A stretch of DNA of 64,000 bases from Leucoraja erinacea. Its lineage: Eukaryota. The stretch lies in assembly GCF_028641065.1 (NCBI RefSeq), contig NC_073377.1, positions 106,826,001 through 106,890,000 of the forward strand, in the 5' to 3' direction. The notes beneath the pieces were generated by a model. The model was given only the letters and a program-made list of their open reading frames with translations, searched no databases and had not been told where the DNA came from. Positions 14,372-61,179 of the stretch are shown here, piece by piece. Both the position numbers and the translations under genes were made by a program. Position 1 is the stretch's first letter, and every line of letters starts with the position of its first letter.

Positions 14372-15152
14372 TAGAAACATAGAAACATAGAAACATAGAA
14401 ATGAGGTGCAGGAGTAGGCCATTCGGCCCTTCGAGCCTGCACCATTCCATTCAATATGATCATGGCTGATCATCCAACTCAGTATCCCGTACCTGCCTTC
14501 TCTCCATATCCCCTGATCCCCTTAGCCACAAGCGCCACATCTAACTCCCTCTTAAATATAGCCAATGAACTGGCCTCAACTACCCTCTGTGGCAGAGAGT
14601 TCCAGAGATTCACCACTCTCTGTGTGAAAAGAGTTCTTCTCATCTCGGTTTTAAAGGATTTCCCCTTTATCCTTAAGCTGTGACCCCTTGTCCTGGACTT
14701 CCCTAACATCGGGAGCAATCTTCCTGCATCTAGCCTGTCCAACCCCTTAAGAATTTTGTAAGTTTCTATAAGATCCCCTCTCAATCTTCTAAATTCTAGA
14801 GAGTATAAACCAAGTCTATCCAGTCTTTCTTCATAAGACAGTCCTGACACCCCAGGAATCAGTCTGGTGAACCGTCTCTGCACTCCCTCTATGGCAATAA
14901 TGTCCTTCCTCAGATTAGGAGACCAAAACTGTACGCAATACTCCAGGTGTGGTCTCACCAAGACCCTGTACAACTGCAGTAGAACCTCTCTGCTCCTATA
15001 CTCAAATCCTTTTGCAATGAAAGCTAACATACCATTCGCTTTCTTTACTGCCTGCTGCACCTGCATGCCTACCTTCAATGACTGGTGTACCATAACACCC
15101 AGGTCTCGCTGCATCTCCCCCTTTCCCAATCGGCCACCATTTAGATAATATT
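14372..15152 (-). mobile_element. Young 5'-truncated CR1 LINE
   Basis: Uninterrupted ORF2 C-terminus (VRPHLEYCVQFWSP..LWNSLPQ..GYGEKAGTGY), 3' UTR and (TTTCTATG)n tail. Confidence 0.92.
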
Positions 15153-26130: not shown

Positions 26131-26373
26131 CAGGGATCTCCAAACTATGGCCCGTGGACCACATCCGGCCCGCCACGAGATTTTATCTTGTTCGCACGTT
26201 CACACGTTCTTAACACGTTCCGTGCGGCGGGCTATTTAGCGGGTTCTGTGGTAGCGCAGCTTTAGAGATCTCTCTCAGAGAGATATAGAGATAAGTGTGA
26301 GAGAGCCTGTATGTGTGAGTCTGTATGTGTGTCTGTGAGTGTGTGTGAGTGTGTGTGAGAGGGAGAGAGATAT
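26131..26373 (+). mobile_element. hAT-Charlie-like MITE terminus running into a GT/GA-rich microsatellite
   Basis: CAGGGATCTCCAAACTATGGCCCGTGGACCACATCCGGCCCGCC resembles Charlie/MER58-type termini; the other end is not visible. Confidence 0.6.
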
Positions 26374-26524
26374 NNNNNNNNNNNNNNNNNNNNNNNNNNN
26401 NNNNNNNNNNNNNNNNNNNNNNNNNNNNNNNNNNNNNNNNNNNNNNNNNNNNNNNNNNNNNNNNNNNNNNNNNNNNNNNNNNNNNNNNNNNNNNNNNNNN
26501 NNNNNNNNNNNNNNNNNNNNNNNN
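26374..26524. other. Assembly gap (151 N) within a (GT/GA)n microsatellite
   Basis: Run of N. Confidence 1.
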
Positions 26525-27659
26525 GAGAGAGCCTGTATGTGTGAGTCTGTATGTGTGTGTGTGTCGGTGTGCGGGTCTATGTGTCTGTGTGTTTGTGTAT
26601 GTGGGAGTCTTCTTAATCTTCTTAAATGCCACTATTGCATCTGCCTCCATCACATCCCCTGGCAGCGCACTCAAGGCACCCACCACTCTCTGTGCAAAAA
26701 CCATGTCCCGCACATCACATTTAAGTTTTGCCCCTCTCATCTTAAACTTATGCTCTACAATAATTGACATTTCCACCTTGGGAGAAGGTGCTTACTGACA
26801 ACCATATCTCATTATTTTATAGGCACCTTGAGATGAAACAGATATATAAATACAAATCTTTCTTCTTCCTGTACATGCATTGTGCAATTCAAGCTAATGA
26901 ATAACTTAAGTATGGCAGTACAAAAAAATACAATAAACCATCGTAAGTTGGCTGCTTGTGACCCACAGCACATTTTTGTGGATCGAACCTTACAATTAAA
27001 ATGTAAATCTTCTTGCTTAATAAACCTTATTGCACTAAAATGTTATGACCCTGTTGGTAATTTGTTAGGAGTGTTTTGTCACATGTGTAAAGATACATAA
27101 AGTAGCTAAAGATTGATTAATAAACTAAAAATGACCACAAACTAACTAAGTAAGCACTTGCCTGGCTGGCTGGCCCTCCAGCTAACAACAACCTATATTT
27201 CCAGACAATTTTCTACATACCAATATATTCCAAGATACTTCACAGGAGCATTATAAAAAATATATATAAACAGTAAAGAGACAGACAAGGATATATAAAG
27301 GGAGATCAATGAAAGTTTCGATAAAAATAGATTATGAGGAGTCTCAAAAAAAGAAAGCAACTTTGACAGAGAAAGAAACATGGGGAAGGAATTTCAAGGC
27401 ATGATGCCTGTGTAGTTGAAGGTACCATCAACAGTGAAACATATAAAAGTGAGAAAACCGAGACACCTCAGTAGGGCATGTGACTGGAGAAGATTAACGA
27501 GGTAGGGATGGGAGAAGCCAGCCAGGAATTTGAAAGCATGGATTTTAAAAGACGGTTCAGTGGCTGAGAGAATGTGGGGGAGGGGATTCTCCCCAAGGAG
27601 AGATTGTTGAAAGTTGACATATTCTCATGGAATTTTGGAAATTCTGGTGCCGGAAATTT

Positions 27660-32190: not shown

Positions 32191-33754
32191 TACAAACATG
32201 CCGAGATGAAAAATGAGAGTTGTTGCCTGTTCTGACTGTGCAGGACAGAGATAGATAGGTCAGAGTGGAAATGGGTCAATTAAAACAACAGGAAACTGGA
32301 AGCTCAAGGTCACCACTGTAGATGGAGCACAGTTCCAACTCTTGTATTCAATGTGTGTGCCATATGTCTTCTTTACCACCTTGACCGTAACTGCACTTTC
32401 AGAGACCTTTCTTGTTACCAAAATTAACCTGGACTCATGCCAATCTCTCGCACCATTCCCCTTAACAAACAAGTACACTCTTTTGGATGCTGTTGGGGTA
32501 GAGGGATGGGGATTGGGAAATTACTGTCAGAGAAGACCAGCAGCAGCAGGCAAGTCTATGGCACCAACTTTTTTAACCACACACTTACCTGCATTAAACT
32601 CCATTAGCCACTCTTCAGAACACTTGCCCAGCGGGTCAAGATTCTGCTGTCATTGTTAATAACCATCTTCAATGTCTACGATACTACCTGCATTATTGTC
32701 AACAGTGAAGAAAATCAGGATGGCAAAAATAAGGCACGAGGTTGCTCTGGCAAAATGAGAATGCAGAGAGATTTGATAAGTATATTAAGGGAAAAGAAAG
32801 AGAGAATGAGGCCCCTCAGAAACCAACATGGTCATCATGTACGGGACACAGAAGATGGGTAAGGTCCTCAATGAATATGTCTCCTCTGTTTTTACTGTGG
32901 AGAATGACATGAATACAGGTGGTGTCTATACGGAGTTTGTACGTTCTCCATGTGACTGTGGGTTTTTTCCAGGTGCTCTGGTTTCCTCCCACATTCCAAA
33001 GATGTACAGTTTGAAGGTTAATTGGCTTTGGTAGGTTGTAAATTTTTTCCTAGTGTGTAGGATAGTTTTAGCATTTGGTGTGTTTGCTGGTTGCCACAGA
33101 CTCGGTGGGCTGAAGGGCCCCTTTCCACGCTGTATCTAAAGTGTCTTCAGGACAGTCTGTATCACGGTCAAGGAGTTGCTGAATGTCTGAAGACATATGA
33201 AGATCAATAATTCTCCTGGGTCTGATCAGATATATCTAAGAACACTGTGGGAAGCTAAAGAAGGAAATGCAGGAATCATGGCTGAGATATATAAATCATC
33301 ATTGTACACGAGTGAGGCTCCAGAAGACTGTAAAGAGGCTCTATTTGAGAATGGCTGCAAAGATGCAGCGTGCAGCAGCTCAGGTTAGTTTAGTTTAGTT
33401 TGGTTTTGTTTACATCACGTGTTCCAAGGTACAGTGAAAAACGCTTGTTGCGTGCTAACCAGTCAGCGGAAAGACTAAATATGATTCCAATTGAGCCATC
33501 CACAATGTACAGATACATGATGAAGGGAATAATGTTTACTACAAGATAAAGTCCAGTTGAGTTCAATTAAGATAATCTGAGATTCTCCAGCGAGGTAGAT
33601 AGTAGCTCAGGCCCACTCTCTAGTTGTTGAGAGGTTGGTTCAGTTGCCTGATAACAGCTGGGAAGATACTGTCTGGATCTGGAGGTGCGTTTTCACACTT
33701 CTTGCCTAATGGAGAGGGGGGGAAGAGGGAGTGACCCGGGTGAAACCTGTCCTT

Positions 33755-33889
33755 CTTCTTCTTCTTGTGAATGGCATGCACAGCCTAAAGTTGTAGATCA
33801 ACTTGTTCTATTTGATCTTGTTCATGCATGTCGGGTTGATTGCATTAGTCGAAACAGTGGACCATGTGAAAGTTGCAATCTCCCACCCC
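33755..33889 (-). mobile_element. Short non-autonomous retroposon with HDV-like ribozyme head and (AAG)n tail, copy 1
   Basis: Imperfect TSD AAACCTGTCCTT (33743-33754) and AGACCCGTCCTT (33890-33901); homologous to 36764-36892. Confidence 0.8.
33838..33889 (-). ncRNA. Putative minimal HDV-like ribozyme (degenerate copy)
   Basis: GGGGUGG-GA-GAUUGCA-ACU-UUCACAU-GGU-CCACU-G-UUUCGA-CUAA-UGCAAUC follows the P1/P2/P3/L3/P3'/P1'/J4-2/P2' order of a nested double pseudoknot; P1' lacks 2 nt. Confidence 0.7.
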
Positions 33890-33969
33890 AGACCCGTCCT
33901 TGATTATGCTGGTGACCTTGCCGAGGCAGCGTGAAGTGTAAATGAAAGGGAGGTTGGTTTGTGTGATGG

Positions 33970-34137
33970 CATCCCTGGAAAGAAGGAATGGGTGACATTT
34001 TAGGCAGAGACCCTTCTTCAGACCCGAAACATCACCTATTCCTTCTCTCCAGAGATGCTGCCTGTCCCGCTGAGTTACTCCAGCATTTTGTGTCTACCTT
34101 CGATTTAAACCAGCATCTGCAGTTCTTCCTTGCACAT
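33970..34137. mobile_element. Fold-back Penelope terminal fragment
   Basis: Inverted pair centred near 34020; flanked by duplicated GTTTGTGT(GATGG). Confidence 0.75.
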
Positions 34138-36130: not shown

Positions 36131-36763
36131 CGTATCAGTTTGTAAGTTTGTAACTTGCCTATTTTAACCAATTTAGATTTGCCAACTGTCCAAATTCATT
36201 ACAAAAAATATCCACTGGAAGGAATTGCTGTACTGCAGTGTTACATCCCTGGATTTTAATTTCTGTGTTAAAATGGAATCCTGGCATTAACAACAACACA
36301 ACCAACTTAATGATGGTGCTGAGGTGGTGAAGGTGGTGGAGCAGGTGTTAGGATGGTTTCATTCACACTGCAATCCTGTGCTGCTGTGCTAATGGCTAAA
36401 TTCCAGCATGGTAAAGATATCCGCAAGAGAGGTCAAGACTCAATTTAAGAAGCAAAACTGTGGCCTGATTGCATGTCATTCTCCTGATGGCTGACAGAAC
36501 ATTAGGGACAGGCAACTCTGGTTAATGTCATTTTTAATTCCTCACATTGGCTGAGTGTCAGTGTTGGAACAAATTAATTACTTCTAGGCAATAATCTGCC
36601 ATAATCACAAGTTCTGCATTTTACTTATATTCTCTCAATATTATAGCCTTAAATGTCCCACATCAAGAAACTGAAAGATTTTGAATGTTTCTTGGCAAAT
36701 AATTAAAAGATGCCAATGAATACATTTTCTCCAAAACCGAGGCACTAATTCAGTACTGCACAA

Positions 36764-36892
36764 GGGTGGGAGCTTGCAACCTTCACCCTGTTTTGACTAA
36801 TGCAATCAACCCGACGTGCACAAGCAAATAGATGTCGTTTTTCATGCCACTTGATCTACAACTTTAGGCTGTGCACACCATACCTAAGAAGA
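36764..36892 (+). mobile_element. Short non-autonomous retroposon with HDV-like ribozyme head and (AAG)n tail, copy 2
   Basis: TSD AGTACTGCACAA (36752-36763) and AGTACTGTACAA (36893-36904); head GGGTGGGAGCTTGCAACCTTCACCCTGTTTTGACTAATGCAATC; tail TTGATCTACAACTTTAGGCTGTGCA..AAGAAGAAG. Confidence 0.8.
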
Positions 36893-39854
36893 AGTACTGT
36901 ACAACTTATTACTGTCAATGAATGCTGCTGCAGTATGTTGTTTTTGGCTGTCATCTTAATGCTCTGAATGCTTAGTCTGTCCACAAGCAAAACTGCACAA
37001 GTCCCTATTGATCAGTTTTCAATTAATGTGCGGCTGCCAGCACCTAACAATGCAGCTACACTTCGTGATTCCAGCCCTCAAATTATCTCTTTCACTCTGA
37101 CATGCTAGTAATGATATTTGTACTTCTATAGCATAGAAAAAGGGAAGCTGTGGGTAGTGAGAAAACACCCATTTAAAAATAATAACTGAAATCCATGCAG
37201 ATGAGGCACACAGCAGCATGGGGGGGAGGGGGGGGGGGGGGGGGTTGTGCCAAGGAAATCAAGAGATCTTCCTGTGCTACAGCCAGAAGAAGCTGCAAGG
37301 TGGCAACGGAACCATTTTCTTCATGGAATTGCACAGCCAAAAATCTGCAGCGATGTTGTACAAAACATCACACCTGTAGAGATATGGCAAGGTATGAATT
37401 GTAATATTTCAAGTACATTTCACATGTGATGCCTTTAGTTGCAACTTCAAACCACCTCAGAGGTCTCTTTGTCTTTATCATTGCAGCATCTCCAGACCGA
37501 CCAGCACATCCTCACTCTATGTAGCAAATAAGATCAAAGGGAGAGTAGCAGAAGACAGCAGCATTAGAGGGTTGAATTTGAGGTGGAAGAACAAAATGCT
37601 CTGTTGTGCCTGACACTACAAGTTGAGTTTAGTTTATTGTCACATGTACCGAGGTACAGTGAAAAGCTTTGCACCTGAAACACCTGTACAATCACTTGCC
37701 AGTTCTAAAAATGTTAGCACCACACAGAGGGATTTCCAGGCAGGAAAACTTGGGAACTATAATGAAAGACATGACCAGGTTAAAACAATGCTGTCATGAG
37801 GAGAAACATCAAGCAGTAGAAAGCTGCAATTTTCAGATGCAGGATACACAATTCCCAGAGAGTTTAGTCATGGAGATGCACAACACAGAAACAGGCCCTT
37901 TGGCCCACCAGATCCATGCCAACCTTTTTGCCCACCTTCTTTCCCCTGCACTTTCTCATATCCTCATAAGCCTTGACTATTTGGAGTGCCTATACCAATG
38001 TCTCCTTAAACTTAAACACAGTAATTGCATTTGACTCCACTACCTGTGGCAGCAAGTTCCAGATAGCAACCACCCTGTGTAAAAGTTTTTCCCTTAAGTC
38101 TCCTTCGAAACATTTTCTCCCATCTTAAACCTATGTCCAATTATATATGATATCCCTACCATGGGAACATATTTGTGACTATCCATCCTTTCCATGACTC
38201 TTAAAATGTTTGTGACTATCCATCCTCTTCCTTAGGAAAAACAAACCCAGTTTTTCTAATCTCCCCCCACAACAAAAGTCCACAGTCTAGGCGACATCCC
38301 TGGTGAATCTCTCATGTGTATTGATATTCACAGTGGGAATGCATACACAGGAAGGTAAAGGTGGTACAAAACATGGAGAAGTGTATCTTAGTTTATTCAG
38401 AGCCATGTGCTGGACTTGGGGGGGGGGGGGGGGGGGCACACAATTCCACGTTGCAGTTGCTAATGGACCAGATTTCTGCTTCTACAGGAACACAAATCGT
38501 GGCCACTTGTAGTCCCTTTGCTACCGAACACATCAGGCTGTTCCCATCAATGCTTTGATGGCTACCATCCACAAGTAAGTTGCTTTTACTCATGATTGGG
38601 ATTATGTCATCTGGAAAAGAATGGTTTCCACTGAGAGAAGATTGTTGGTCCATTTTGTTACCGTAGGCACCAAGAGAGGTTTTAACAGCAAATTATCCAC
38701 ATGGGTCATAGTAAAGGCCCAGACTTTTGCCAGCCCAATTCTACATGATTCCTATTGGCACTCCAAACTTTAATTTTCCATTGTTAAAAGTGCCGGTACA
38801 ACAAAGGGGATTCTTGCTGGATAACTTTGGACTTTCACTATTAATGATTGTGTTAATCAAACTGTCATGAATCATTTGTTCTCTTTAGAATGTTTTCATC
38901 ATGAAGTTATAGTTGCTTATGAGCTTTATATTGTTGACCAGTTTCCAATCTCAGTCATAAATTAAGGATCAATAGTCATCACTAGAAAACTAAATGTAAA
39001 AGTGTGATTATTTAAGGTAGAGCCATTGATTAGTACAAAGATATGTATAGTCGATGTAGCTAAAATAGATTATAACCCAATCAATGAGGCAAAATTTAAT
39101 TTATTTCATGGCCACCTTTTTTTAATGTTTTTTATAAAACAGGCAAAAATCTACAGAGATAATATTTTTGATATGATTTGCTCATATCAAATTTTCGTCT
39201 TGATTAGTACAAAGCAAAACTTTAATTAATGGTAGAAGTGTCACTTGAAAGAAAACTCAAATGTTTCATGTGTAATAGAATAAGATATATATCTCATTCC
39301 TTACGTGGGAAACAAGAGTAGGGTGTAAATGGTTCCTGACCCAAAACTGATTTCTGTTAATATCCAATTACCATACACTCCCTTTTTTTGGCATTGAAAT
39401 ATATTAGCTCTCAACTTCAGCATTTTCTGCATCAGACTAAAATGAGGAAAAGTATTTTTGGAGTATGAGCATAACACAATTAAAAATGCTCAGATCATAG
39501 AATACCAAGATAAAATTAATTAACCGCTGTAATTTCTTACTGCATTTATAATGACTACACTCTGAGGTGGTACAACGTAACTTTGTGCAAATGCTTACAC
39601 ACACATTCAGAACACCAGCCATATTTAAAAGGAGAAAGAATTAAAGAGCGGATGACTTTCAATCAACGATATCTCCAACCTGCTACATCTTTTTGTATGT
39701 GAAGATAAGTAGTTGAGAGAAATGCACATAGAAGATAGTAAATCCATTTTTTCCCCCCTTTATTACTTTATGAATCCTGTTTTTAAAATAAGCTAAGAAA
39801 TAAACCCGTTTTACCTCCTGGCTAAAGTTTTGGGCTCAACATTTAAGTTTGCAG

Positions 39855-46700: not shown

Positions 46701-46834
46701 CTTGTGTTCTGTGTCTTGTGTCTACTGTTTGTGGGTAAGTGTGTCTGTTTAGTGTTCAGCCATGAGCGAATGGCGGTGCGGGCTCGATGGACCTGGTGGT
46801 CTGCTCTCGCACCTACTTTCTATGTTTCTATGTT
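43766..46834 (+). mobile_element. Young CR1 LINE with nearly complete ORF2 (APE endonuclease and RT) and three frameshifts
   Basis: AITETWL, GDFNF, SDHNMV (APE); SPGPDG, YLDFQKAFDKVPH, GVPQGSVLGP, FADDTK (RT); (TTTCTATG)n tail; 13-bp TSD TCTATATCCATAT at 43753-43765 and 46835-46847. Confidence 0.95.
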
Positions 46835-48191
46835 TCTATATCCATATCTACTCATAGCCATGGTATTTATGGGATTTATTCAGATGAGTTTTTGGTCATT
46901 ATCTTTCCCCAGGGTGTTGATAGTGGGTGACTCAGTGACAGGAGTACCATTGACTATCAAGGACATGTTGCTGGACTCACCCTCATTGGAAATAGATATT
47001 GTGTAGCAATTGTATGGCAGCGATATTATTTGGCACTTTGTAGCCCATGCCTAAATGGTCTCGATGCATTCAGGCATGAACTAATTCATTTCCTGAGGAG
47101 TTAGGAATGGAATTGAAAATTATGCAATCATCAGGAAATATCCCCATCTCTGATCTTATAGAGTCAACATGCCCTTTGGCCCAGCTTGTCCATGCCGACC
47201 AAGGAGACTTTCAATAACCACACCAATCTACTTCTAAACAAGAAATGACCTAAACTATAGGTGTGTTTTCCTCTGGATGCCCGTTAACTTCAGTTTCATT
47301 GTTGGTCAAAGAGTACCTTTAGGTCAAGGACAGTCACTTTCCCGTCAATGCTGAAATTCAGTTATTTGAGTAATGTTTGGACAAAGCTATGATGACCCAA
47401 TGGTCTTGGGGAGACCCAGGCTAGGCATCGGAAAACCGGTGAGTACTTATAACTTAATGGTACTGTTGGCAGTACCTTCCATCACTTTACTGACGATTCA
47501 GAGTCAACTCAATCAGTAGTAATTAGCTAGGTTTAATTTGTCCTGCCTTTTGATTTATAGAAAATAACTATGTAATTATCCATATGGATGGGTAGATATC
47601 AGTGTTGAATCTCTACTGGACAATTTGGTAGAATCACAGCTAGTTCTAGTCTGCCATCATTCTGTACCACAGCCAGGATATTGTCAGATTCCAAATTTCT
47701 ATTTATTGCAGTGCTTTTGTTCCTTATTGACATCATATGGAGTGAATTGAATTGGCTGAAGTCCAACTTCTGCAGCAGTGTGAATCTCAGAAAGCAGTCA
47801 AAATTGATCATCTGTAATGCTTCTACTTAAATAGGATGGCTTCAGCAAAAGGCTACTAAGATGTAACAGTTTTAAATTTGCTCCTCTAACCTAGAATACC
47901 CATTTGTAAAATGCCATCCCTTTTATCTACCAAGGGAATTCATGACTACACGACTCCTGGCAATCTACATATCCACCAAAACTAATGCCAAGATGGCACT
48001 GGATAAATTATACTCAGTCATCAATTATTTTGAAACATCAAGCCCTGATGCCCTATTCATCATTGTTGGTCACTTCAATCAAGCTAACTTCAGGAATCTA
48101 CTCGCCAGCTACGATTAGCATAGCTCCTGCACCACATGGGTTGTTCACACTCGTGACCCCTGCTACAATATTGAGTCTGCCTATCGCTCTA

Positions 48192-55290: not shown

Positions 55291-55720
55291 GGTTTGTATC
55301 AGTGAAGTAAGTTGGTGAAACAGCACGACTTGAGAAATTTAGATGCGAGGATTGGCATCAGGATATAGGTTAATACAGGACTGTGCTCACCTTTCCTACC
55401 GTTCAAAGGTCAGTATAAATGTAGTTGTACTGAATGCAATAGCTTGGTGCTAACACAGGTTAATGGATGCAACACCGTGGGAGTTCAATGAGTTATTTGA
55501 GGCAACTTCTATTGTTTCACTTGCAAGCTTCATTCACCCACCAGTTGGGGCCAGCATCATCTTTCAGCTTCCAGGTAATTTATTCTGTGAAACATCACTA
55601 AGTCACACTGTGTGAAAAATGCATTATATTTCAAGATCAGCTGCAGGAAGTTACCAATGGGAACTTTGGCAAACAGAAGCGTAGGTGGCTGTAGGAAATG
55701 GGAGCCGGCATATTTACATT

Positions 55721-55831
55721 GGTGGCAGGTTGAGGTGTCGGTGAATTGGGCAGCAGGTGGCAGGTTGAGGTGTCGGTGCAGTGGGCAGCTGGTGGCAGGT
55801 TAAGGTGTCGGTGGAGTGGCCAGCTGGTGGC
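55721..55831. repeat. 35-bp minisatellite, 3 units
   Basis: GGTGGCAGGTT(G/A)AGGTGTCGGTG.. at 55721, 55756 and 55791. Confidence 0.9.
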
Positions 55832-59900: not shown

Positions 59901-61179
59901 ACCCCGAACCAGGCGTAGCCACATGCGTATGCCTCGGACTGCCTGTGCATGCTTCCAGAACACAAAGCATATATTGTGTCACCATCTCCAATAGTCTTTC
60001 GGGTGGGAAGAATATTTCAACCCTGAAACTAGGGTAGTTACAGGCATATGACTTGAACTACCTGTGCATGCTTCCGTAATACAGAGCATAATATTTGGCA
60101 CCATCTCCATCACTTCATTCATGCGAGTGGGAGGATTTATGCAACCCTGAACCAGGAGCTGCCTCAGGAATGTGTGCATATACTTTGACACCGTCTCCAT
60201 CACTCCGTTCATCCGAGTGGGGGGAATATTGCAACCCTGAACCAGGAGCTGCTTCAGGCATATGTGCATATACTTTGGCACCATCTCCACCATTCCTTTC
60301 AGCTGAGTGGGAGGAATATTGCAACCCTGAACCAGGAGCTGCTGCCTGACATGCCTTTGTAACACGGAGCATTTCTTGTGCCACAATCTGATTCATCAGA
60401 TGTTCTAATGGAGACAAATGCCCAATCACATCTGCCATAGATGTCCCAAATCATCCGACAAGACTTGTCCCACAGACTTGGCTTGACTTTGCCCCGACTC
60501 GGGGTTGTCAGGCTGCTCCCTTCAGCAGCCGAACTGGGACTAGTTGTGCAGATCGGTTCTCTGTTGGTATCATCATTATACTTACCAGACAGGTTGCACC
60601 TGCTAGTGACTCCTAGTCCTTGCCCCCTTCTGGAGCCCAAGCGGAGTATTACAGGGAAGGACTGGAGCGCCTGTGGCCCCCATACGACTCGAATGCACCG
60701 GCATTATAATCGGAGTCACCTCTTCCAGTTAGTCCACTAGACAGAGTGGGAGAAATACTGCAACCCTGCCAGGTGTTGCCATAGGCAATATGATTAAAAG
60801 AAGCCTATCTCCATTAATTTGACTGCTTTATCGATATGCACATAGTTGGAGTCTCTTATAAAGGAATCTTCAACAGTCCCCTCTAATGAGTGGAAATTAC
60901 CATGATGCCACCAGGTGTAGTCCCACAGGTGTCTATAGGCACAGCTCCAAAAAGGCTTCCTAAGCCAGGAGCTCTGGACTGCAATGACAAGTCCAATTTC
61001 ACTATAACCATTGGTGTATGTGATAATAAATGTCCTTTGTAATTATCATTTTTAACATAAACTTTATTGGCATGATAAGATATATCGTTATATTGCCAAA
61101 GAACTAAACATGACCTTAGAATGCTATCGACCACGATAGTCACAAACGTGACCGAGTGGCAACCGCTATTAATGCCAAC
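56987..61179 (-). mobile_element. Decayed DIRS1-type tyrosine-recombinase retrotransposon (right ITR and ICR present; 5' end not seen)
   Basis: 56987-57065 is inverted at 57210-57290 and followed by a copy of the left-ITR start (ICR architecture). Degenerate minus-strand remnants LISA*RTQPL and LTAYPPEQR (YR-like) and VDAF..PNCLFI (MT-like). Confidence 0.7.
59883..60348 (-). repeat. Imperfect 90-120-bp tandem repeats inside the DIRS gag-side region
   Basis: GAGTGGGAGGAATATTGCAACCCTGAACCAGGAGCTGC recurs at ~59883, ~60001, 60125, 60215, 60305 and again at ~60745; ORF repeat QLLVQGCNIPPT. Confidence 0.85.

What the first reader, a model, noticed from the sequence alone, without database searches (positions are those of the whole stretch)
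33755..33889. ~135-bp mini-retroposon headed by a minimal HDV-like ribozyme
Seen: a TSD-flanked, (AAG)n-tailed element with no tRNA, 5S or 7SL head. Its 5' end, merged with copy 2, gives the 54-nt consensus GGGGUGG GA GAUUGCA ACC UUCAC(A/G)U GGU CCACCCU G UUUCGA CUAA UGCAAUC. P1 is GGGGUGG/CCACCCU with the hallmark G1-U wobble, P2 is GAUUGCA/UGCAAUC and P3 is ACC/GGU with a 7-nt L3. There is a 1-bp P1.1, a vestigial P4 and a J4/2 CUAA carrying the catalytic C. The predicted cleavage site falls exactly at the element/TSD boundary. Known: HDV-like ribozymes head R2, RTE and ingi/L1Tc elements, and Ingi/Vingi LINEs spawn short internally deleted derivatives. Inference: this is a ribozyme-processed SINE-like parasite that cuts itself out of read-through transcripts and borrows an Ingi/Vingi-like RT through its 3' tail. 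I do not know of it being described in cartilaginous fish, but I cannot check that.
Basis: partly seen in the sequence, partly recalled or inferred. Interest (0 to 1): 0.88.

Follow-up and report, generated by a model that had tools for sequence, protein, structure and literature searches.

The report
Decayed retroposon with HDV-like ribozyme head
This is a worn-out copy of a very abundant 138-base jumping element whose intact relatives begin with a stripped-down version of the self-cutting RNA fold known from hepatitis delta virus and the mammalian CPEB3 gene, which probably trims the element's own front end, though cutting has not been shown.

Summary
The element is real. Copy 1 (33752-33889, minus strand) and copy 2 (36763/4-36894, plus strand) are insertions flanked by target-site duplications and ending in (AAG)n tails. 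They have no tRNA, 5S or 7SL head.

Neither window copy carries the intact fold. Copy 1 lacks 2 bases in the 3' strand of P1 and has two substitutions. Copy 2 lacks about 9 bases, which removes part of L3 and the 3' strand of P3.

That form fits a P4-less HDV/CPEB3-type nested double pseudoknot starting at base 1 of the element. In shuffled sequence such a fit occurs about 4 times in 10 million start positions.

Related copies lose likeness to copy 1 at G1 or within 2 bases of it.

- Self-cleavage is untested.
- My one RNA run showed no cluster of 5' ends at G1.
- No Rfam ribozyme model matched.
- No partner LINE was found, so the Ingi/Vingi idea is unsupported.

The scan had already noted this family on other pieces of the same genome. 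The kind is known (R2 SIDEs, L1Tc/NARTc). I found no paper describing it in a shark or skate. I rate it a new variant of a known kind.

The parts
33752..33889 (-). Copy 1 of the retroposon, 138 bases, G1 at 33889. About 11 majority-letter differences plus indels from the family majority, so an old decayed copy.
33838..33889 (-). Remnant of the ribozyme head, 52 of the expected 54 nt. Segments: P1 5' 33883-33889; J1/2 33881-33882; P2 5' 33874-33880; P3 5' 33871-33873 (ACU here, ACC in the majority); L3 33864-33870 (UUCACAU here, UUCACGU in the majority); P3 3' 33861-33863; P1 3' remnant 33856-33860, with 2 bases missing between 33856 and 33857; G 33855; UUUCGA 33849-33854; J4/2 CUAA 33845-33848; P2 3' 33838-33844.
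   Evidence: direct reading; pairs counted; majority letters
33775..33830 (-). Predicted 3' hairpin of the body. Outer stem 33824-33830 with 33775-33781; inner stem 33812-33818 with 33795-33801. Inferred recognition element for the partner reverse transcriptase.
   Evidence: centroid; z-score not significant; inference
33752..33766 (-). (AAG)5 tail
33890..33899 (.). Target-site duplication on the 5' side of copy 1
33743..33752 (.). Target-site duplication on the 3' side of copy 1. It overlaps the last tail base; 8 of 10 places match the other copy.
36763..36894 (+). Copy 2 of the retroposon. The head at 36763-36807 has about 9 bases deleted (3' part of L3, the P3 3' strand, start of the P1 3' strand). 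(AAG)3 tail at 36886-36894. Flanks at 36752-36763 and 36893-36904 match at 11 of 12 places, so the element may start at 36764.

Best explanation
**What it is.** Window 33752-33889 (minus strand) is a decayed copy, now surely inactive, of a very abundant ~138-base non-autonomous non-LTR retroposon. A second decayed copy lies at 36763/4-36894.

**The fold.** In the family's majority form the first 54 bases fit an HDV/CPEB3-type nested double pseudoknot without a real P4:
- P1 of 7 bp, opening with G1.U
- a 2-nt J1/2
- P2 of 7 bp
- P3 of 3 bp
- a 7-nt L3
- a 4-nt J4/2 beginning with C

**Likely mechanism (inferred, not shown).**
1. Master copies are transcribed passively as part of longer host or read-through transcripts.
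2. The ribozyme cuts just 5' of G1, which gives every RNA the same 5' end.
3. A 3' hairpin plus the (AAG)n tail is recognised by the reverse transcriptase of an unidentified LINE.
4. That enzyme copies the RNA into a nicked target, leaving 9-12 bp duplications.

**Shown here:** the insertion, its boundaries, the tail, the duplications, high copy number, the family-majority letters and the fit to the fold.
For: **Insertion and boundaries**
- Paralogous empty sites and target-site duplications fix the boundaries.
- There are two independent copies with different flanks.

**Family-majority letters**
- They restore P1, P3 and L3 exactly as predicted from merging the copies (33871, 33865, GG behind 33856, X5 loose end at 33857).
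- P2 is 7/7 in copy 1, and CUAA is present in both copies.

**Chance**
- The strict descriptor is rare by chance: 2 hits with P2>=7 in 40 shuffles of 64 kb searched on both strands, and 0 in the real window.
- Here the fit starts at base 1 of the element.

**5' ends of related copies**
- table 8 printed 24 contig pieces. Of these, 14 run into the head.
- 11 of the 14 stop being alike at 33889 (5), 33890 (5) or 33891 (1).
- The other 3 stop at 33881-33887.

**Match to CPEB3 core**
- The residues that passages of PMC4836649 name for CPEB3 fall on the same numbers in this head.
- These are the U20.G25 wobble, C22 in P1.1, A23 in L3, a P1.1 of one G-C plus one U-U, and a 4-nt J4/2 of C, G, A, A.
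- A CGAA variant of J4/2 occurs at 33847, in 12% of X1 depth and in 121 of 315 RNA reads.

**Precedent**
- Ribozyme-headed non-autonomous retroposons are an established mechanism: R2 SIDEs with in vitro cleavage (PMC3414825, passages) and L1Tc/NARTc (PMC3383444, abstract).
Against: - No cleavage assay has been done.
- The one RNA run laid (X22, polyA, about 6% of the run read) gave no place where many molecules begin or end. 89% of its 1949 laid reads ran on into unlike sequence. So most RNA carrying the element is read-through, and no 5' end at G1 was seen. The test is weak because the reference copy is damaged 33 bases from G1.
- No Rfam ribozyme family matched, even at E up to 10. These scans could only see the two damaged copies.
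- The share of copies carrying the intact P1 3' strand could not be measured. By summed contig depth the GG insertion is only 2.5-3.7%, probably because contigs were clipped at 33857 (8 of the 24 listed pieces end there).
- Other variants occur at 33858.
- No variant reaching the 10% cut was listed in P1 or P2 (15 rows were not shown), so this call shows no covariation for them.
- Nested folding of the damaged copies is no better than shuffles.
- No partner LINE was found.
Confidence: 0.65

Rival explanations
1. The head is a conserved structured 5' module that does not self-cleave, for example an internal promoter or a protein-binding element inherited from the partner LINE. In that case the uniform 5' end comes from transcription starting at G1.
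For: - No RNA 5'-end cluster and no cleavage evidence in my data.
- No Rfam ribozyme hit.
- No covariation seen in the head.
- In trypanosomatids the same 77 nt act both as promoter and as ribozyme, so a promoter role is conceivable (PMC3383444, abstract).
Against: - The fit covers all of P1, P2, P3, L3 and J4/2 with correct spacing and starts at base 1. That occurs about 4e-7 per position by chance.
- The unpaired core residues match those named for CPEB3.
- No tRNA, 5S or 7SL-type pol III head is present.
Confidence: 0.2
2. The HDV-like fold is a chance resemblance, produced by merging two damaged copies of an ordinary short retroposon.
For: - Neither window copy has the fold.
- The consensus was assembled after the fact.
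- Relaxed descriptors hit 36 times in the window.
Against: - Independent reads and contigs carry the merged letters.
- Strict hits are rare in shuffles and absent from the real window.
- The position of the fit coincides with the element's first base.
Confidence: 0.05
3. The element is a short internally deleted derivative (SIDE) of an Ingi/Vingi-clade LINE.
For: Only the analogy with L1Tc/NARTc and the R2 SIDEs. None of my calls adds evidence for it.
Against: - No LINE sharing head or tail is in the window.
- Public scans gave nothing related.
- The clade of the partner is entirely open. HDV-like ribozymes are also reported for R2, baggins and RTE elements (PMC6765202, passages).
Confidence: 0.1

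Closest known systems
R2 SIDEs and R2/R1 hybrid SIDEs of Drosophila (PMC3414825; abstract and passages read)
   Same: Short non-autonomous non-LTR elements made of a 5' HDV-like ribozyme plus a LINE-type 3' end. They are not pol III SINEs. The ribozyme frees the 5' end from a co-transcript.
   Different: - Those insert site-specifically into rDNA, are few in number, carry a full-size R2 ribozyme, and were shown to cleave in vitro.
- This family is dispersed and very abundant, has a 54-nt P4-less head, is untested, and has no known partner.
L1Tc / NARTc of Trypanosoma cruzi, Pr77/L1TcRz (PMC3383444 and PMC3185411; abstracts only)
   Same: An HDV-like ribozyme sits at the exact 5' end of a LINE and of its short non-autonomous derivative. 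The elements are dispersed and released from long co-transcripts.
   Different: Those are in a protist, with a 77-nt dual promoter/ribozyme. No sequence similarity was tested here, and no promoter activity is known for this head.
Mammalian CPEB3 ribozyme (PMC4836649; passages read)
   Same: - The same residue identities fall at the same numbers in the core: U20, C22, A23, G25.
- P1.1 is one G-C plus one U-U.
- J4/2 is 4 nt beginning with the catalytic C. The minor family variant CGAA equals C57-G58-A59-A60.
   Different: - CPEB3 is a single-copy intronic sequence with a real P4 stem.
- This head has UUUCGA in place of P4 and heads a retroposon.
- Rfam's models found no match in the damaged window copies.
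- Common descent was not tested.
Minimal HDV-like ribozymes of microbiomes and theta ribozymes of phages (10.1101/2023.06.13.544163, abstract only; the original minimal-ribozyme paper is recalled and was not seen)
   Same: HDV-type double pseudoknot with P4 reduced or missing.
   Different: Those are bacterial or phage sequences, not retroposon heads in an animal genome.

Membership tests
HDV-like self-cleaving ribozyme | P1 helix of about 7 bp beginning at the base 3' of the cut site, opening with G1.U | tested here: met
   Met in the family-majority form, by reading the letters reported: GGGGUGG with CCACCCU. Copy 1 itself has 6/7 in a shifted register. Copy 2 has 7/7 with A1-U.
HDV-like self-cleaving ribozyme | P2 pairs the segment after J1/2 with the 3' end, making the outer pseudoknot | tested here: met
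   Copy 1 7/7, copy 2 6/7. The nested fold also predicts P2 in copy 1.
HDV-like self-cleaving ribozyme | A 3-bp P3 closing a ~7-nt L3, directly followed by the 3' strand of P1 | tested here: met
   Copy 1: A-U, C-G, U.G with a 7-nt L3. The majority has ACC/GGU. This part is deleted in copy 2.
HDV-like self-cleaving ribozyme | J4/2 with the catalytic C just before the 3' strand of P2 | tested here: met
   CUAA in both copies. A CGAA variant occurs in the family (place 33847). The role of the C was not tested.
HDV-like self-cleaving ribozyme | P1.1 mini-helix between L3 and the bases after P1 | tested here: inconclusive
   G after P1 could pair with C22, and U with U21, as described for CPEB3. 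This is a reading only, with no covariation.
HDV-like self-cleaving ribozyme | P4 stem | tested here: not met
   Only UUUCGA lies between P1 and J4/2. P4 length is said to vary greatly among HDV-like ribozymes (PMC4836649 passage), and P4-less active forms are recalled, so this does not exclude the family.
HDV-like self-cleaving ribozyme | Divalent-ion-dependent self-cleavage 5' of G1 | not testable with these tools
   Needs a bench assay. RNA run X22 showed no 5'-end cluster.
Rfam HDV/CPEB3-type ribozyme families | A match to a curated covariance model | tested here: not met
   0 hits at gathering score. No ribozyme family at E<=10 over 33600-34000 or at E<=5 over the whole window. Only the two damaged, P4-less copies could be scanned.
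SINE (pol III, tRNA/5S/7SL head) | A head derived from a pol III small RNA | tested here: not met
   No tRNA. No 5S, 7SL or tRNA model match.
SIDE (internally deleted LINE derivative) | Shares its 5' and 3' ends with an autonomous LINE of the same genome | not testable with these tools
   No such LINE in the window, and the rest of the genome is not readable here.
Ingi/Vingi-derived element | Sequence shared with an Ingi/Vingi LINE | not tested
   No repeat library or Ingi/Vingi sequence was available.

The most novel reading that the evidence does not exclude
This genome holds on the order of ten thousand P4-less ribozymes with a CPEB3-type core as heads of active or recently active retroposons. 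Such retroposon heads would then be the ancestral pool from which the single-copy mammalian CPEB3 ribozyme was captured. That would make a vertebrate retroposon origin of CPEB3 directly testable.
Probability: 0.15. Interest if true: 0.85.

Novelty: new variant of a known kind. Interest (0 to 1): 0.6.

Why it matters
- Ribozyme-headed retroposons are known from insects and trypanosomes. If this head cleaves, it would be a very compact (54-nt) natural HDV-type ribozyme amplified to high copy number in a vertebrate.
- It would show how a promoterless parasite can obtain a defined 5' end from any host transcript.
- It would give a natural series of thousands of variants for studying the minimal fold.
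- Its core resembles that of the CPEB3 ribozyme, whose origin is unexplained. That question would become open to comparative tests.
- The two copies in this window are dead relics and matter only as witnesses of the family.

Tried and rejected
**Tried without useful result**
- **Rfam scans** at gathering score and at permissive E-values found no ribozyme family. The listed weak matches (miRNA, snoRNA and lncRNA models) are chance.
- **Nested folding** of the two heads and of both whole copies gave z-scores of 0.51, -0.10, 0.48 and -0.02. This is uninformative, because the fold is a pseudoknot and both copies are damaged.
- **Descriptor scan of the window** for further HDV-like heads gave 0 strict hits. 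The 36 relaxed hits look like chance.
- **blastn with word size 7**, using both copies against the window, found only the two copies. It found no LINE sharing either end.

**Public collection scans**
- Head pattern in metagenome contigs: 0.
- 3' pattern in metagenome contigs: 2 hits, both inside GC-rich Gly/Pro-type coding DNA and unrelated.
- Head pattern in viral contigs: 0.
- Head pattern in bacterial/archaeal genomes: 2 hits that do not continue beyond the 18 letters.
- As a result I had no intact natural copy to fold, to scan with Rfam or to build a model from. I did not build or fold a consensus.

**Reads**
- I used 4 of the 24 runs listed (X1, X7, X5, X22).
- I laid only 361 bases around copy 1.
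- No RNA 5'-end cluster was seen. Earlier notes of this scan report such ends on other copies; I could not reproduce that.

**Earlier findings**
- Searches by sequence and by three word sets returned nothing on a partner LINE.

**Literature**
- Searches found no description of this family.
- One search was badly posed and returned only fish papers.
- The library holds open-access papers and preprints only. Supplements were closed, and repeat libraries (Repbase/Dfam) could not be consulted, so 'not in print' is limited to those searches.
- The key papers by Webb, Ruminski, Riccitelli and Luptak were not held and are cited from recall or through the review PMC6765202.

**Organism**
- I did not identify it.

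Full report
**1. What is at the coordinates**

Read on the minus strand, the element starts with GGGGTGGGAG at 33889. It ends in five AAG repeats at 33766-33752. The finding's start of 33755 cuts 3 bases off the tail.

The flanks are GGACGGGTCT upstream and GGACAGGTTT downstream. They agree at 8 of 10 places, and both differences are transitions.

A second copy lies on the plus strand at 36763/4-36894. It has three AAG repeats, and its flanks agree at 11 of 12 places. Depending on whether its first A is a changed G1 or part of the duplication, copy 2 starts at G1 or one base later.

blastn with 7-letter words found no further copy or fragment in the 64 kb. Neither ARAGORN nor Rfam sees a tRNA, 5S or 7SL head.

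**2. It is an insertion, and the boundaries are right**

I laid three runs of DNA contigs (X1, X7, X5) and one run of polyA RNA raw reads (X22) on 33640-34000 at 80% likeness. These were 4 of the 24 runs listed.

Copy 1 sits inside another very high-copy repeat. Other copies of that host repeat join 33742/33743 directly to 33890-33897, skipping 147-154 bases. That equals the element plus one duplication.

**3. The ribozyme consensus**

Neither window copy has the fold intact.

| Feature | Copy 1 | Copy 2 |
|---|---|---|
| P2 | 7/7 | 6/7 |
| P3 | A-U, C-G, U.G | 3' strand deleted |
| L3 | UUCACAU | 3' part deleted |
| J4/2 | CUAA | CUAA |
| P1 | 3' strand reads CCAC-UG; only 6/7 pairs, in a shifted register | 7/7, with A1-U |

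One search tests the merge against the rest of the family.
- At 33871 the family reads G, not A. This holds for 98% of summed depth in X1 and for 87 of 89 plus 99 of 103 RNA reads. It gives ACC.
- At 33865 the family reads C, not T, in 84% of X1 depth. It gives UUCACGU. Copy 1's change is a CpG-type transition.
- GG is put in behind 33856 in 41, 38 and 40 contigs of the three DNA runs and in 72 of 272 RNA reads. It gives CCACCCUG.
- The X5 loose-end consensus behind 33857 (55 records, agreement 0.75) reads the same three changes in one piece.

With these letters all 7 P1 pairs form (G1.U, then six Watson-Crick pairs) and P3 is three Watson-Crick pairs.

One caveat applies. By summed depth the GG insertion is only 2.5-3.7% in the DNA runs. 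I attribute this to clipping of short contigs at the indel, since 8 of the 24 listed pieces end at 33857. I could not measure what share of copies is intact. Other variants at 33858 exist: T>G, and GC put in.

**4. More than chance?**

I wrote a descriptor with these rules:
- G1, then a 7-bp P1 ending in G1.U
- J1/2 of 0-6 nt
- P2 of 5-8 bp
- P3 of 3 Watson-Crick pairs
- L3 of 6-9 nt
- the 3' strand of P1 directly after P3
- 1-69 nt, then C-N-R-A, then the 3' strand of P2

By hand check the merged form satisfies it, with P2 = 7.

The real window gives 0 strict hits. Forty dinucleotide shuffles give 9 hits with P2>=5 and 2 hits with P2>=7. That is about 0.05 per 64 kb searched on both strands, or about 4e-7 per start position. 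Such hits would not be rare across a whole genome, but a hit starting at the first base of a retroposon is very unlikely by chance.

**5. 5' ends**

table 8 printed 24 contig pieces. These are the longest ones plus some at joints, not a random sample. Fourteen of them run into the head.

| Likeness stops at | Pieces |
|---|---|
| 33889 | 5 |
| 33890 | 5 |
| 33891 | 1 |
| 33881-33887 | 3 |

Several of these contigs continue for 80-630 further letters that do not match the stretch. Related copies therefore share the 5' boundary at G1 or within 2 bases of it. This is what a fixed RNA 5' end predicts.

**6. RNA**

X22 gave 1949 laid reads from about 6% of the run. Both orientations were present, and 89% of reads ran on into unlike sequence. 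The element is therefore mostly seen inside longer transcripts from many loci.

The tool listed no place where many molecules begin or end. I have no evidence of cleavage in vivo.

The test is weak for three reasons: the library is polyA-selected, the run is labelled as organism D and not the best holder's organism A, and the reference copy is damaged 33 bases from G1. Earlier notes of this scan (s1-877453, s1-878676) report RNA starts at G1 on other copies. I could not reproduce that here and do not count it as support.

**7. Abundance and age**

Summed word depth over the head is about 0.5 million in X1. The single contigs listed have depths of 12-50. Read roughly, this suggests on the order of 10^4 copies, but the tool warns that the figure is not a copy number.

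The 3' 25 bases (33783-33808) have about three times the depth of the head. Their majority letters differ from both window copies at 33797/33798. That module is probably shared with a more abundant family or with the partner LINE.

Copy 1 differs from the majority at about 11 listed places plus indels, so it is old.

**8. Mechanism**

*Shown:* a dispersed, abundant, short non-coding element with duplications of 9-12 bp and a simple-repeat tail. That is target-primed reverse transcription by a LINE enzyme, from established knowledge of non-LTR elements.

*Inferred:*
1. Passive co-transcription. No pol III head is present, and the RNA reads are read-through.
2. Self-cleavage 5' of G1.
3. Recognition of the 3' hairpin (centroid) and the (AAG)n tail by a 'stringent' LINE reverse transcriptase.

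The partner is unknown, and the Ingi/Vingi suggestion has no support from my calls.

**9. Comparison with what is known**

The review PMC6765202 (passages) makes three relevant statements:
- HDV-like ribozymes head R2, L1Tc, baggins and RTE elements.
- Hundreds of intergenic HDV-like copies lie between conserved downstream sequence and varying upstream sequence.

R2 SIDEs are the closest architecture (PMC3414825). NARTc is the closest dispersed case (PMC3383444, abstract). So the kind is known.

Three things are different here:
- the 54-nt head without P4;
- a core whose named residues coincide with those of the CPEB3 ribozyme (U20.G25, C22, A23, a P1.1 of G-C plus U-U, a 4-nt J4/2; PMC4836649 passages).

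Membership in Rfam's ribozyme families was tested on the damaged copies only and was not met.

My searches for HDV-like with shark, HDV-like with skate, and self-cleaving with cartilaginous fish found nothing on this family. That library is open-access only.

**10. Verdict**

- The ribozyme-head reading is well supported by sequence, but no biochemical or in vivo test has been done.
- The LINE-clade inference is unsupported.
- The two window copies are inactive relics.
- This scan has already noted the same family on other pieces of this genome.
Only single places were compared.

Noticed in passing
window 33640-33750 and 33890-34000: Copy 1 is inserted into another very high-copy repeat, with summed depth of 1-3 million. 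Many related copies lack the insert, and loose-end consensus sequences show its continuation.
   Followed up: partly
window 33783-33808: The 3' module of the element has about 3 times the summed depth of its head. Its majority letters differ from both window copies at 33797/33798. It may be shared with a more abundant family or with the partner LINE.
   Followed up: no
window 33847: A family variant changes J4/2 from CUAA to CGAA. It makes up 12% of X1 depth and 121 of 315 RNA reads in X22, so it is over-represented in RNA or in organism D.
   Followed up: no
window 60086-60342 and 55720-55831: A 90-bp tandem repeat (2.9 copies, 86% matches) and a 35-bp tandem repeat (3.2 copies, 90% matches).
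   Followed up: no
window 14372-14401 and 46817-46839: Perfect 8-mer tandem arrays (TAGAAACA x3.8 and TTTCTATG x2.9). They look like the simple-repeat tails of CR1-type LINEs; that resemblance is recalled, not tested.
   Followed up: no
window 26374-26524: A run of 151 N, flanked on both sides by near-identical TG-rich repeats (26303-26361 and 26529-26603). It was left untouched.
   Followed up: no
L001 1085-1104; L002 6632-6651: Two metagenome contigs share a 20-letter match to the element's 3' module inside a GC-rich repetitive Gly/Pro-type coding region. This is chance and unrelated.
   Followed up: yes
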